Both the position numbers and the translations under genes were made by a program. Below the pieces are notes generated by a model, which made no database searches, was not told where the DNA came from, and saw nothing but the letters and a program-made list of their open reading frames with translations. A DNA stretch of 64,000 nt from Haplodiscus bocki (lineage: Eukaryota): positions 27,590,001 to 27,654,000 of the forward strand of contig OZ296653.1 in assembly GCA_965655095.1 (NCBI GenBank). The letters run 5' to 3'. Positions 55,434 through 60,072 of this stretch are shown piece by piece (the stretch's first letter is position 1; every line of letters starts with the position of its first letter).

Positions 55434-55654
55434 AATCTATCCTTTGTTATTTTTCGCCGCATATTTATAATATGCAAGAAAAATTATTCATTCAGTAAGG
55501 CCGTTTTTCTTCCAATTTTGCCAACTCTTTCTATTCAAAAATAAATGTCAGCAATGGGGTTATGACAGAAGTTTCTCAAGCAGCAGACCCCGGTTCAAAT
55601 CTCCGTCGTGTCAGATATTTTTATGATTTCACTGACATTTGTCAGAATTTCCAA

Positions 55655-55718
55655 TTGTTCCCATGGCACAGTGGGTAGGATAACAGGATTCTGAAGAGGT
55701 GCGGGTTCGAATCCCAGC
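55655..55718 (+). mobile_element. tRNA-derived SINE head (Pol III A and B boxes), interrupted by the RTE insertion; continues from 58814
   Basis: A box TGGCACAGTGG 55664-55674 and B box GGTTCGAATCC 55704-55714. No complete cloverleaf seen. Confidence 0.6.
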
Positions 55719-58700
55719 ATTCTTCTTCTTTTCACCATGACCGTTGCAGTCTTAGGTTCCATCTTCCATTTTCTTCCACTTCTCTTTGTCATTTGCTTTT
55801 AGTTCTGCAGTTCTCATATCCTTTATTTTCATATTCTCGAATACAATCGAAGTCCAATTTGTTCTTCTTTTTCCTCTTCCTTTCTTTTCATTAACAATCA
55901 TCGTCATTTTCTTCAGATCTTTTCCTGCAGATTCTCTAAGTATGTGTACCAGGTATCTGATTTTCCTTTTAACTGATTGCAGGAGTTCAGGCTTTTCAAT
56001 TTTATTTTTTAGAAGAACTTCTTCATTTGAGACATAGTCGTTCCAGCTGATCTTTAATATTCGTCTGTAGCACCAGAGTTCAGAGGCTGTAATTTTCTTT
56101 TGGAGCGATTTCGTCAGTGCAAAGCATTCCGATCCGTATCTCAATATAGACCATACATGAGTTTTTAGTAATCGCAGTTTCGTCTTGAGTCTAATGTTGT
56201 TTCGCAGGAGTTCTTTGTTTCCAGAAGGCTTGCTTAGATTTCGCAATATTGGCCCGGACATCTACGTCATGTTTCATCGTCTCATTTATCCATATTCCCA
56301 AGTACTGAAAATTACTGACTTGTTCTAACTTGTCATCACCAATTTGTATATCTTTTTTTTGAGTTCCATTGTCTGTCACAACCATGCATTTAGTTTTCTT
56401 TGGATTTATTTCAATCAACCACTTCTGCAGGTTGCTTTTTATTTTATTCAGAGTGTCATTCAGTTCCTTCTCGCTTTTGGCCATTATAACTGTGTCATCT
56501 GCGTAACTAATTTTGTATATTTTCTTTTTCTCGTATATTTCGATCCCGTTTTTAATCTTGAAGCTTCTAAACGCCTCTTCGGCGTAGATAATAAACAGAA
56601 TGGGTGAAAGGATACACCCTTGCCTGACGCCTCGTTTTATTTTTATTTCGTTTTCTCGCTCACTGTCGTTCCGCATGAATGCTCGTTGTTTGTTGTATAA
56701 TTCGCAAATCAGACGAATTTCAGCTTGTTTCACTCCTTTCTTCTTCAGGACTTCAATGAGCATTTTTTGTTCAACTCTGTCAAAGGCTTTGGTAAAGTCA
56801 ATAAAGCAAAGGTAAGTACTTTTCCTATGATTTATTCTGTTATTCAGGATCGTTTTTGGAGCTGTAATACTTTCCACAGTTCCAACCTTTGGTCTAAAAC
56901 CGAATTGTAGTGGGTCTAGTTGCCTGTTAATTTTAGTGCTAATCCGATTGTACATTGTTTTTCATAAGATCTTCATTGCGTGAGGTATAAGCGCAATTCT
57001 TCTGTGCGCTTCAGACTTTTTCGTTCCTGACTTTTGTGGGATTTCCACAAAGATGGATTCGAATAACTCTTCCGGAATTTCTTCTTCTTGCTGATAGATT
57101 CGATGAATTAGTTGGCAGACTTGTGACAGTGTTCTGTTACCACCATACTACAGAAATTCCATGGGAATGTCGTCACTTCCCGGGTATTTGTTGTTGCTGA
57201 TTCCCCTTGCCGCATTAAAGATTTCCACAAGAGATATTTCATCGTTTTCAGTCGTCTTGTATTCTGGTCTTTCAAGCTTGCTGTCATATAGCTCTTCCAT
57301 GTATTCTTTCCATCGTTTGTTTATCTTGTCTTTTTCTCCTAAAAAGGGATCCATTTTTATCGGCTATTGATTTGTTTTGTTTAGGTTTTGCTTTTGGTGC
57401 AAGTTGTCTGACAAGTTGTTACATTTTCATAGTCTCGTTTCTATTTTCAAGGTCTTCAACCTCTCGGCATTTTTGTTCTATTTCTTCATCTTTTGCTTCG
57501 CAGCATTTTCTGCGTATTGACTTCGGAAGTTCTTTCACTGCTCGTTGGTCATTTTCGTTCCGTCGCTGATTCATTAGTTCAATTATTTCATCAATCGTCC
57601 AATTATTCCTTTCGTTTCTTTTTTTTCGGTATGCAGTTATTCGCAGCTTTTGTTAGTCTCTTCTTTATATCCACCCAAGTATTTTCACCTGTGATTTCTT
57701 GTTCTTCCACATACTTCCTGAACTGGTGTTTGTTTTTTGTCTGTCTCAGCCAGCCAACGTCGATGCGGTCTTCCCTTCTCGGTTTCTTGATTCTTTGCAT
57801 GTGTTTTCTTCAAAGTACCGATTACTGGATCGTGATCAGATAGCTTGTCAACTTTGTGTGTGACCTTACACTTCCGCAAAGATTTTTCGTGCTTTTTGTT
57901 TATGGTAATATAATCAATCAGACTTTGTCCTTTTCCACTATCGCTTTTCCACGTGTAGTTTTTACTTTTTTGATGCTCAAGAACGTGTTCTCTGCTACAA
58001 GTTTATGTTTCTCACAGAATTCCACAAACGATCTTCCGTTTCTATTGTTTTCGTTGTTTCCATATTTTCCAGTTATACCCTTGATCTCGTTACAGCCGAT
58101 TCTGCCGTTAAAATCTCCCATAATCACAACTTGCCTGTTCTTTCCTGTGTTCAGTTGCGTCCTTACTTTTTCAACTTTTCCGTAGCACTTCTCTACCTCT
58201 TCTTTTTTTGCTGATATGTCGGGTATGTACACTTGGATCAGAACTGCGCAATTTCGACCCATGTCCAGATTGATTCCAATTACATTTGGTCCTTCTGATG
58301 CTACATTTATAACTCGCTGGTCCAGCTTATCGCAAATTAAGAAGCCAACTCCTTTTCGTCCTGTATCATCACAGTCACTTACATACAGCTTGTACGTTCT
58401 TTCATTCCTTTTTGTAGGCCGTAGGGTGTAAGTGTTGGCCTTTATATATGTTTCAGCTAATCCCATCACGTCGATGTTGAGACGGTCCATTTCTTCGCAT
58501 AGCATCTGCTGTTTTCCTGTTTCTCTCAAACTTCTGATATTCCATGTAGCAATTTTAAGTTTTTGTTTGCGGTTTTCGCTTGTTAACGACCCGAGGAGCC
58601 TCATATCTCCCCCTGCCGGACGAGGTTCTGTTACCAGTCCCATTGACGTCGTTGTTTGAATTTTGTGTTGTGGATTGCATGTTGAAGATGGTTTACCATT

Positions 58701-58813
58701 GCTGCATTGGCCGTTCCTCACGTTACGCGAGGCCCGTTGCCCAGGGAATCCCAGGGAGACCCTATTTGTAGGGAAACCCACTCGTGGAGGGTGCAGTTGG
58801 CTTTTTATTCCCC
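55719..58813 (-). mobile_element. Full-length (~3.1 kb) RTE-clade LINE, frameshifted, with 7-bp target-site duplication TCCCAGC
   Basis: Single APE-RT frame: IATWNIRSL, GLAET, GDFNGRIG, SDH, QFGFR, FIDFTKAFD, GVRQGCILSP, YADD, YGSE. (AAG)n tail at about 55720-55732. TCCCAGC at both 55712-55718 and 58814-58820. Confidence 0.93.
58702..58813 (-). ncRNA. HDV-like self-cleaving ribozyme candidate at the RTE 5' end
   Basis: P1 GGGGAAU/AUUCCCU with G1-U wobble, P2 CUGCA/UGCAG, P3 CCC/GGG, L3 starting UCC pairing with GG (P1.1), GCAAC junction, P4 CCUCGCG/CGUGAGG, J4/2 GCCAA. G1 (58813) directly abuts the TSD. Confidence 0.75.
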
Positions 58814-60072
58814 TCCCAGCCTTTACCTACCTTTTCAACTTTAGTAATACGACGGAAAATTGTGATACCCCATCTCTTACGCATGGAAATTTTCGATGTC
58901 ACAATTTTTCTGAATCACAGAAGAGTTCACCTACGAATTTTTTCAGCACTGTGAGACAATCAATTTTCAACGGAAAATTGTGATAATTTTTGCATAAATC
59001 TAATTTTTAGATAAATTTAGAAATCAGTGATGGAATTGATGTTTGTAGAAAACCTTTGAAAACTAGATTCAAAATAGTAGTTTAACTGTTAGCAAAAGTT
59101 GATTAAACTATTTCTAGTTGGGCGAAAAATATACCGGCGCTAGCCGACCGTCTTGTTTTTTTTATTTCAATCTGCGATCGATTAATGGCAGCAATGTTGC
59201 GAAAAGTTTCTGATATACTTGGGCCCCTGCTTGTCAACTTTTGACGAAACAGAAAATATCACATTGCTCACTGCGCATTTTGTCTAATTTATCAAATCTC
59301 CAGCATTTTAGTCTCATTTTTTTCTTCAAAATCGCAAGTTTTTGGCGACATGATTTTATCTCATTGGGGGTAGGTTTTTGCGATGCGCCCTTATTTCCAT
59401 TTACCAAAATTTTTCCCATCAGCTTTTGAAAAACAGGATCAAAAGTTTCTGTGATGCCGGTTTTGCATATTCGAAGCCCTGAAATTGATCGAATTTGAAC
59501 GTTCCAGAACTTGCTCAAAAACTTGAAGCTGTCGCAAAAAATTTTTGTGTTTAATAATTTTCAGCCCTAATTAACGCAGAAAATTTTGCAAATTTCGGAA
59601 AAAATTCAAAGAGTATTTCCTCCTCAACTACGCATTTTTAGGAAATGAATAACAACTTGTTTGAAAGGTCTATCATGAAGCTCTAGTTTGGTCTGGTGAG
59701 CCGATGTCGACGCGCGCCGCCCTTTGGAATTCGGTTTGTAACAACGGCGTGCTATTGGGTTTTAACGCACTGGTCTTATGTGCGTGATGATTTAGGGTTG
59801 CTACTTCATATTCAGCAAGCATTTTGGAGAAAAGTGTCCTATGCGAAAAAAGTGAATGGTCAGGAAATCTGGCTGTTTTTTGACATGAAAGTGCCCATTA
59901 AAACCGTAATTCTGTTAAAACTGGACAATATAACAGGAGAATGAAAAATATAGCGTCCTAATGAATGTGTGTTTGTGGAAAATTGATCCGGAATTTGAAA
60001 AAACGGTTGCCTGCTTTAAAGCAGCGCTACGTCTGTTAAGATTATACTTGATTTATGCATTTTCAGAACTCT

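What the first reader, a model, noticed from the sequence alone, without database searches (positions are those of the whole stretch)
58702..58820. HDV-like ribozyme whose cleavage site is exactly the RTE 5' end
Seen (minus strand): G1 at 58813 starts P1 GGGGAAU, which pairs with AUUCCCU (58749-58743). P2 CUGCA (58796-58792) pairs with UGCAG (58706-58702). P3 is CCC/GGG, P1.1 is CC/GG, a P4 hairpin follows, and J4/2 GCCAA has the putative catalytic C at 58710. The target-site duplication begins at the very next base (58814), which independently indicates that the inserted RNA began at G1. Known: HDV-like ribozymes process the 5' ends of R2 and RTE elements.
Basis: partly seen in the sequence, partly recalled or inferred. 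Interest (0 to 1): 0.7.

Follow-up and report, generated by a model that had tools for sequence, protein, structure and literature searches.

The report
HDV-like ribozyme heading an RTE retrotransposon
The first 112 bases of a dead 3.1-kb RTE-type jumping gene encode a self-cleaving RNA of the hepatitis-delta-virus type whose predicted cut site is the element's first base, a known arrangement; this copy also carries an unusual 28-base insertion in the catalytic loop L3.

Summary
Thirteen uninterrupted copies of the SINE-like repeat that was hit show that the inserted DNA is exactly 58813..55719, flanked by a 7-bp duplication, GCTGGGA. The genome holds 17 copies of this 5' end. None shares sequence upstream of G1, and the duplication abuts G1 in seven.

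The helices alone are not beyond chance (10 loose-descriptor hits against 6.5 expected). The case rests on three other things:
- The conserved core nucleotides: a strict descriptor gives 0 hits in 300 simulated windows.
- Six canonical short copies that align end to end with Rfam HDV_ribozyme (33 bits, E 0.002, below the gathering score).
- Compensatory changes in P1, P2 and P3 in a sister family and in related elements from two other assemblies.

The window copy is a derived long form with a 28-nt insertion (58781-58754) that makes L3 36 nt. Rfam misses it, and its activity is inferred only from long-form insertions that still begin at G1. No RNA data exist, and ORF2 is broken in every copy examined.

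HDV-like ribozymes at RTE 5' ends are already published, so this is a new member of a known kind. Other first-stage notes report the same motif elsewhere in this genome.

The parts
55719..58813 (-). RTE-type non-LTR retrotransposon, 3,095 bp, with a degraded ORF2
   Evidence: Homology with 15 other copies runs from G1 to window 55719-55723. Paralogous empty sites confirm the limits. Pfam finds Exo_endo_phos and RVT_1.
58814..58820 (-). Target-site duplication, 5' copy (GCTGGGA)
55712..55718 (-). Target-site duplication, 3' copy (GCTGGGA)
58702..58813 (-). HDV-like ribozyme, long form (112 nt), with the predicted cut 5' of G58813
   Evidence: Model R1 scores it 97.3 bits over the full model.
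58807..58813 (-). P1 5' strand, GGGGAAU
   Evidence: 7/7 paired
58743..58749 (-). P1 3' strand, AUUCCCU
58797..58806 (-). J1/2, A-rich linker (4 or 5 A among copies)
58792..58796 (-). P2 5' strand, CUGCA
58702..58706 (-). P2 3' strand, UGCAG
58789..58791 (-). P3 5' strand, CCC
58750..58752 (-). P3 3' strand, GGG
58753..58788 (-). L3, 36 nt. It keeps the core UCCACGA at its 5' side, and CC 58787-58786 forms P1.1.
58754..58781 (-). 28-nt insertion in L3, absent from the six short-form copies. It is predicted to fold on itself (58779-58754, -11.5 kcal/mol for L3 alone).
   Evidence: Assembly unitigs of the public runs break at 58753.
58741..58742 (-). P1.1 3' strand, GG
58712..58736 (-). P4 hairpin (outer CG/CG, GG.AA internal loop, 7-bp core, UAA loop)
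58707..58711 (-). J4/2, GCCAA. C58710 is the putative catalytic cytosine.
   Evidence: Alignment of the short form to RF00094
58631..58699 (-). 22-codon upstream ORF starting 2 nt after the ribozyme and overlapping the ORF2 start
   Evidence: Read
57921..58643 (-). ORF2 piece with the AP-endonuclease domain (ATG at 58643)
   Evidence: PF03372 E 3e-6
56194..56955 (-). ORF2 piece with the reverse transcriptase domain
   Evidence: PF00078 E 4e-35

Best explanation
Window 58813-58702 (minus strand) is the 5'-terminal HDV-like self-cleaving ribozyme of an RTE-type non-LTR retrotransposon (58813-55719).

Proposed mechanism. The element has no evident promoter of its own and is transcribed as part of a longer host transcript. 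The nested double pseudoknot (P1, P1.1, P2, P3, P4) folds, and the cytosine at 58710 in J4/2 catalyses scission of the bond 5' of G58813. This frees an RNA that begins with the ribozyme. Full-length reverse transcription of that RNA puts G1 next to the target-site duplication. The ribozyme ends 2 nt before a small ORF and 58 nt before the ORF2 start codon, so it may also help translation, as proposed for other such elements.

Shown here:
- the fold and the core letters;
- the exact insertion limits;
- the common 5' end of the family;
- homology of the short form to HDV ribozyme models;
- covariation across lineages.

Inferred: cleavage itself, co-transcription, and any role in translation.

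The window copy is a derived long form with a 28-nt self-pairing insertion near the 3' side of L3. It probably still cleaves, because long-form elements inserted repeatedly with G1 as their first base. It may cleave less well, because the long lineage is older and star-like while the younger clade is canonical.
For: - Helices and core nucleotides are present.
- The strict descriptor hits only this site in the window and gives 0 hits in 300 simulated windows.
- Thirteen paralogous empty sites give the exact insert and a 7-bp duplication.
- There are 17 copies of the 5' end and none has homology upstream of G1.
- The duplication abuts G1 in the window copy, L053, L054, L063, L064, L066 and L067.
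- The short form scores 33.1 bits on RF00094 (E 0.0018, model 1-89), with RF02682 second. In a whole-genome RF00094 scan, 4 of the top 5 hits are short-form copies.
- Model R1 finds all 17 copies, plus a sister family with P1 pair 6 changed AU to CG and P3 pair 1 changed CG to GC.
- A relative with 48% ORF2 identity in another assembly has GGGGUCU/AGACCCU, GCC/GGC and L3 UCCUCGU, 25 nt before its ORF.
- L093 has GGGUUC/GAACCU and CUGAC/GUCAG.
- For the short form, the unconstrained minimum-energy fold is the native P1+P3+P4. For the long form, the native nested fold lies 1.1 kcal/mol above the minimum.
- Precedent for RTE: PMC6765202 and PMC3774820, both citing Ruminski 2011.
Against: - There is no experimental or RNA evidence. 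The four public runs are DNA contigs.
- The window copy gets no Rfam hit even at E 10, and the short form stays under the gathering score.
- Helices alone are at chance level under a loose descriptor.
- L3 of this copy is 36 nt, outside every canonical HDV-like ribozyme I know of.
- Two copies (L059, L061) lack the P1 3' strand through a 10-nt deletion and carry G4U, yet still end within about 3 nt of G1.
- Three long-form copies have 1-5 extra bases before G1.
- Four more distant relatives (L096-L099) show no detectable ribozyme in the upstream sequence available.
Confidence: 0.85

Rival explanations
1. The family ribozyme is real, but the long form in this window is catalytically dead or severely slowed by the 28-nt insertion in L3, which sits in the active-site loop. 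In that case the window copy is only a relic of an impaired lineage.
For: - L3 is 36 nt against 7-8 nt in the short form, the sister family, L094, L093 and L068.
- The insertion holds two decoy GGG-N-UUCCCU-like repeats. A decoy P1+P3 fold is as stable as the native one (-38.0 against -38.1 kcal/mol).
- Long-form copies are older and star-like (tips 0.019-0.057). The younger clade (tips mostly 0.005-0.015) is canonical, as if the long lineage died out.
- Exact G1 junctions are fewer among long copies (3 of 9) than among short copies (4 of 6).
Against: - At least nine independent long-form insertions with unrelated flanks start at or within a few bases of G1, so long-form RNA was ended there.
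- The seven core L3 letters, P1.1 and all helices are untouched.
- The insertion is predicted to fold on itself. All 6 substitutions seen in it among the long and 10-nt-deleted copies other than L061 fall in its unpaired positions.
Confidence: 0.3
2. The common 5' end is set by transcription initiation from an internal promoter at +1, as in several other LINE clades. On this view the HDV-like fold is a relic, or serves only translation or protein binding.
For: - L059 and L061 lack an intact P1 yet have nearly the same 5' end.
- There are no RNA data to tell 5'-OH ends from capped ends.
Against: - P1, P2 and P3 keep pairing through compensatory changes across lineages, and the catalytic-core letters are conserved. 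That is not expected of a relic.
- The 5' end coincides to the base with the cleavage position of the HDV model.
- RTE elements are reported to lack their own promoters (PMC6765202).
Confidence: 0.05
3. Chance resemblance: GC-rich triplets that happen to allow an HDV-like drawing.
For: The loose descriptor finds 10 such drawings in the window against 6.5 expected. The minimum-energy z-score is only -1.0.
Against: The strict descriptor gives 0 hits in 300 simulations. There are also the Rfam alignment of the short form, the covariation, and the exact coincidence with the element's 5' end.
Confidence: 0.01

Closest known systems
HDV-like ribozymes at the 5' ends of RTE and baggins retrotransposons (drz-Agam-2 type; Webb 2009, Ruminski 2011, cited in PMC6765202 and PMC3774820)
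   Same: A nested double pseudoknot at the very 5' end of an RTE-type element, with the cut site equal to the element's first base. There is no evident promoter, and the ribozyme lies just upstream of the coding region.
   Different: Different host (the closest ORF2 relatives are chelicerate and hemipteran) and different sequence. Rfam's drz-agam models gave no hit on this family. J1/2 is a short A-rich linker without a P1.2 helix. The window copy has a 28-nt insertion in L3, a site where I know of no natural peripheral domain; the known sites are J1/2 and P4 (PMC4908430 for J1/2).
Hepatitis delta virus genomic ribozyme (Rfam RF00094)
   Same: The short form aligns over model positions 1-89. 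The shared letters are L3 UCC-CG-U, CUGGGCAAC after P1, and GGC-AAU in J4/2.
   Different: The score is 33 bits, under the gathering score of 50. P1, P2 and P4 sequences are unrelated. The context is a retrotransposon, not a circular RNA.
R2 element ribozymes (Eickbush and Eickbush; PMC3774820)
   Same: An HDV-like fold that processes a co-transcript to make the element's 5' end.
   Different: R2 inserts site-specifically in 28S rDNA, and in most species it cuts 9-36 nt upstream of the junction. Here insertion sites are dispersed and the cut is at the junction.

Membership tests
HDV-like self-cleaving ribozymes | Nested double pseudoknot in the order P1-P2-P3-P3'-P1'-P1.1-P4-P2', with a 7-bp P1 and a 3-bp P3 | tested here: met
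   7/7, 5/5, 3/3 and 2/2 pairs; P4
HDV-like self-cleaving ribozymes | G1 at the cut site closing P1 with a G.U wobble | tested here: met
   G58813 with U58743. The same holds in 17 of 18 distinct rows of alignment A2.
HDV-like self-cleaving ribozymes | Catalytic cytosine in J4/2 (C75 equivalent) | tested here: met
   C58710. The GGC-AAU stretch aligns with the RF00094 consensus in the short form.
HDV-like self-cleaving ribozymes | Short L3 (7-8 nt) that supplies CC for P1.1 | tested here: inconclusive
   The CC and the first seven L3 letters are kept, but L3 is 36 nt in the window copy. The six short copies and all other lineages have 7-8 nt.
HDV-like self-cleaving ribozymes | Helices supported by covariation | tested here: met
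   P1 pairs 4, 5 and 6, P2 pairs 4 and 5, and P3 pair 1 change on both sides across lineages. There are few independent events.
HDV-like self-cleaving ribozymes | Mg2+-dependent self-scission giving a 5'-OH product | not testable with these tools
   No RNA runs were available.
Rfam RF00094 HDV_ribozyme (curated family) | Score at or above the gathering threshold of 50 bits | tested here: not met
   The window copy has no hit at E<=10. The short form scores 33.1 bits.
RTE clade of non-LTR retrotransposons | About 3.2 kb, one long ORF with an N-terminal AP endonuclease and a reverse transcriptase, and only a vestigial first ORF | tested here: met
   3,095 bp; PF03372 and PF00078; a 22-codon upstream ORF overlapping the ORF2 ATG.
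RTE clade of non-LTR retrotransposons | 3' end with a short simple repeat rather than poly(A) | tested here: met
   The tail is ...GAAGAAGAA(T/G) in all copies. It is expanded to (AAG)n in L057.
RTE clade of non-LTR retrotransposons | Reverse transcriptase groups with RTE references in a phylogeny | not tested
   No reference set was at hand. As indirect support, relatives are about 1,000 aa on contigs of about 3.3 kb, and some are named craniofacial development protein 2, a label I recall being used for RTE/BovB-derived genes.

The most novel reading that the evidence does not exclude
The long form is an active HDV-like ribozyme that tolerates, or uses, a 28-nt structured domain inserted in the catalytic L3 loop. 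That would be a natural peripheral domain at a site not described before. It might tune the cleavage rate through the decoy P3'/P1' repeats it contains.
Probability: 0.45. Interest if true: 0.55.

Novelty: new member of a known kind. Interest (0 to 1): 0.4.

Why it matters
This adds a well-documented case of ribozyme-defined 5' ends in RTE elements, with exact empty-site proof, family-wide junctions and cross-lineage covariation. The host appears to be an arthropod; that is a guess from the ORF2 relatives only.

The one feature that goes beyond the textbook is the natural set of three variants within one genome: the canonical short form, the long form with 28 extra nt in L3, and the long form less 10 nt. 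They could be compared directly at the bench to learn how much the HDV active-site loop can tolerate.

An intact ribozyme in a dead element can also still cut any host transcript that reads through it.

Tried and rejected
- Rfam on the window at the gathering score and at E<=10 found nothing at the site. The insertion hides the motif.
- Plain minimum-energy folding is uninformative (z -1.0).
- The loose helix descriptor is at chance level.
- RNA evidence: the only four runs are DNA contigs, so no 5' ends could be read.
- ARAGORN finds no tRNA in the flank, although the flanking repeat looks tRNA-derived.
- The feature search of the protein atlas gave only generic reverse transcriptase hits.
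- P0001 (Nymphon) is not on record for its contig.
- L096-L099 have no ribozyme hit in 243-846 nt upstream. Those contigs may lack the 5' end.
- Model R1 misaligns the 3' half of L093, so I read that one by hand and checked it by script.
- Ruminski 2011, Webb 2009 and Webb and Luptak 2011 are not held, so the precedent is cited through reviews.
- I considered a hairpin GUGGG-UUUC-CCUAC in the insertion, because L061 changes it compensatorily. In long-form copies the substitutions fit the longer self-paired fold better. The question is left open.
- No consensus of the element or mended frame was built.

Full report
**What is there**

- P1: GGGGAAU (58813-07) with AUUCCCU (58749-43), opening with a G.U wobble.
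- P2: CUGCA (58796-92) with UGCAG (58706-02).
- P3: CCC (58791-89) with GGG (58752-50).
- P1.1: CC (58787-86) with GG (58742-41).
- P4: 58736-58712.
- J4/2: GCCAA, with C58710.

A script confirmed each pair.

**The element and its limits**

Downstream lie pieces of one ORF with an AP-endonuclease domain (57921-58643) and a reverse transcriptase domain (56194-56955). A 22-codon ORF (ATG at 58699) precedes them and overlaps the ORF2 ATG at 58643.

Homology with 15 other copies ends at 55719-55723. The flank 58814-58900 and the flank below 55718 are two halves of one SINE-like repeat with a tRNA-like T-arm motif in antisense. Thirteen uninterrupted copies of that repeat read straight across the predicted empty site.

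The inserted DNA is therefore 58813..55719, 3,095 bp. It is flanked by GCTGGGA at 58820-14 and 55718-12, and it ends in GAAGAAGAAT rather than poly(A). Size, domain order, the vestigial first ORF and the simple-repeat tail fit an RTE-type element. ORF2 relatives are about 1,000 aa on contigs of about 3.3 kb. The best named ones come from a sea spider, a scorpion and psyllids, and some are labelled craniofacial development protein 2. I did not place the reverse transcriptase in a reference phylogeny.

**Family 5' ends**

The genome (1.5 Gb) holds 17 copies of this 5' end, and all candidates were scored. In none does similarity continue upstream of G1.

I fetched the full copies and read both junctions.
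- The duplication abuts G1 directly in the window copy, L053, L054, L063, L064, L066 and L067.
- L052, L055 and L056 have 5, 1-2 and 1 extra bases.
- The junctions of L057, L058, L062 and L065 are ambiguous.
- L059 has 3 extra bases and a complex 3' junction.
- L060 is internally deleted, and L061 lacks its 3' end, so neither could be read.

Depth in public DNA runs falls about tenfold from the 3' end to the 5' end, the usual 5' truncation. ORF2 is broken in the window copy. No other copy with a 5' end keeps it whole either; the longest stop-free stretch is 666 aa.

**Is the fold more than chance?**

Helices alone are not. A loose descriptor finds 10 drawings in the window against 6.5 per simulated window, and the minimum-energy z-score is -1.0. 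With the conserved letters added (G1.U, Watson-Crick P1-P3, L3 starting UCC, GG after P1, C-N-R-A before P2'), only 58813(-) remains, against 0 hits in 300 simulations.

**Three forms of the ribozyme**

The copies fall into three forms.
- Short form, six copies: these lack window 58781-58754 and have L3 UCCACGAU.
- Long form, nine copies including the window: these carry the 28 nt.
- Deleted form, two copies (L059, L061): these are the long form less 10 nt. The deletion removes the true P1 3' strand, and both also carry G4U.

Rfam finds nothing on the window copy. The short form aligns over all 89 positions of RF00094 HDV_ribozyme (33.1 bits, E 0.0018, under the gathering score), with G1 at the model's first P1 position and shared CUGGGCAAC and GGC-AAU. 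RF02682 comes second. In a whole-genome RF00094 scan, four of the five best hits are short copies of this family.

**Covariation**

A covariance model built from the six short copies recovers all 17 copies genome-wide. It scores the window copy at 97.3 bits.

It also finds three old copies of a sister family.
- Their flanks are unrelated upstream of G1.
- An endonuclease-type ORF start follows downstream.
- P1 is GGGGACU/AGUCCCU and P3 is GCC/GGC, so both helices changed on both sides.

On the 20-row alignment, 93% of cells pair, against 28-45% when partners are slid.

Relatives from other assemblies add more covariation.
- P0005 (48% ORF2 identity) has a ribozyme 25 nt before its ORF, with GGGGUCU/AGACCCU, GCC/GGC and L3 UCCUCGU.
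- L093 has GGGUUC/GAACCU and CUGAC/GUCAG.

All these lineages have a 7-8 nt L3. The canonical loop is therefore ancestral, and the window's 36-nt L3 is derived. Four more distant relatives (L096-L099) showed no ribozyme in the upstream sequence available.

**Does the long form work?**

A tree of element bodies, with the ribozyme left out, puts the six short copies in one well-supported clade. Their tips are short (mostly 0.005-0.015). The long and deleted copies form an older star, with tips of 0.019-0.057.

Every long copy has its own flanks and duplication, so long-form RNA was repeatedly ended at or next to G1. This argues that the ribozyme still cut. The evidence is indirect.

In energy terms the native nested fold of the long form is 1.1 kcal/mol above the minimum, with the insertion paired on itself (58779-58754). 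A decoy fold that uses the duplicated GGG-UUUCCCU inside the insertion is equally stable. The later success of the canonical lineage suggests a cost to the insertion.

The two deleted copies are unexplained. They cannot form P1, yet they start within about 3 nt of G1. Either the 10-nt loss arose after insertion, by slippage between the TCCCTGGG repeats, or the 5' end does not strictly need P1.

**What is known**

HDV-like ribozymes at the 5' ends of RTE, baggins, R2, R4 and L1Tc elements are published. The cut falls at the 5' junction for RTE, and a role in translation has been proposed (PMC6765202; PMC3774820; both cite Ruminski 2011, which is not held here). Known peripheral domains sit in J1/2 (PMC4908430) and in P4. 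I know of none in L3, but that is memory, not a test.

**Verdict**

This is a new member of a known kind, with one variant feature worth a bench test.

Three other first-stage notes report the same motif on other pieces of this genome, and one reports the L3 hairpin on this stretch. I treated these notes as leads only.

Noticed in passing
window 58814-58900 and 55620-55718: The RTE sits inside a SINE-like repeat with a tRNA-like T-arm motif (GGTTCGAATCCCAGC on the plus strand). The first search gave 307 candidates, and copies are 81-88% alike. ARAGORN calls no tRNA there.
   Followed up: partly
L068:1503-1571 (G000:C604:35990-36060): A second, unrelated and compact HDV-like ribozyme candidate: GGCCCUU/AAGGGCU, CGCUCA/UGAGCG, ACC/GGU. 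It scores 35.2 bits on RF02682 (E 4e-5), 35 bits on RF00094 and 24 bits on drz-agam-1. It is single-copy on a small unplaced contig. Only the sequence about 80 nt downstream of it matches a tandem repeat on C11.
   Followed up: partly
L090:1501-1571(-), L091:1501-1570, L092:1501-1572: A sister retrotransposon family with its own short-P4 HDV-like ribozyme at its 5' end. It gives seven matches in the genome, all old and decayed.
   Followed up: partly
L059:3433-3535(-), L061:104-204: Two copies share a 10-nt deletion that removes the P1 3' strand, plus G4U, yet they begin within about 3 nt of G1. L061 also has three changes that keep a GUGAG-UUUC-CUCAC hairpin. This is unexplained.
   Followed up: partly
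L057, 3' junction: The element's GAAGAAG tail is expanded into an (AAG)n microsatellite. This recalls reports that RTE tails seed microsatellites (the Tay 2010 reference in PMC6765202).
   Followed up: no
window 58753/58754: Assembly unitigs of four public DNA runs all stop at 58753, the edge of the 28-nt indel. This fits the short and long forms branching there in the assembly graph.
   Followed up: no
L094:1408-1476 and L095:1408-1476 (ENA ERZ25067903): A related RTE in another organism's assembly carries a canonical HDV-like ribozyme 25 nt upstream of its ORF. The two loci have identical neighbours, so they may be haplotigs or a segmental duplication.
   Followed up: partly
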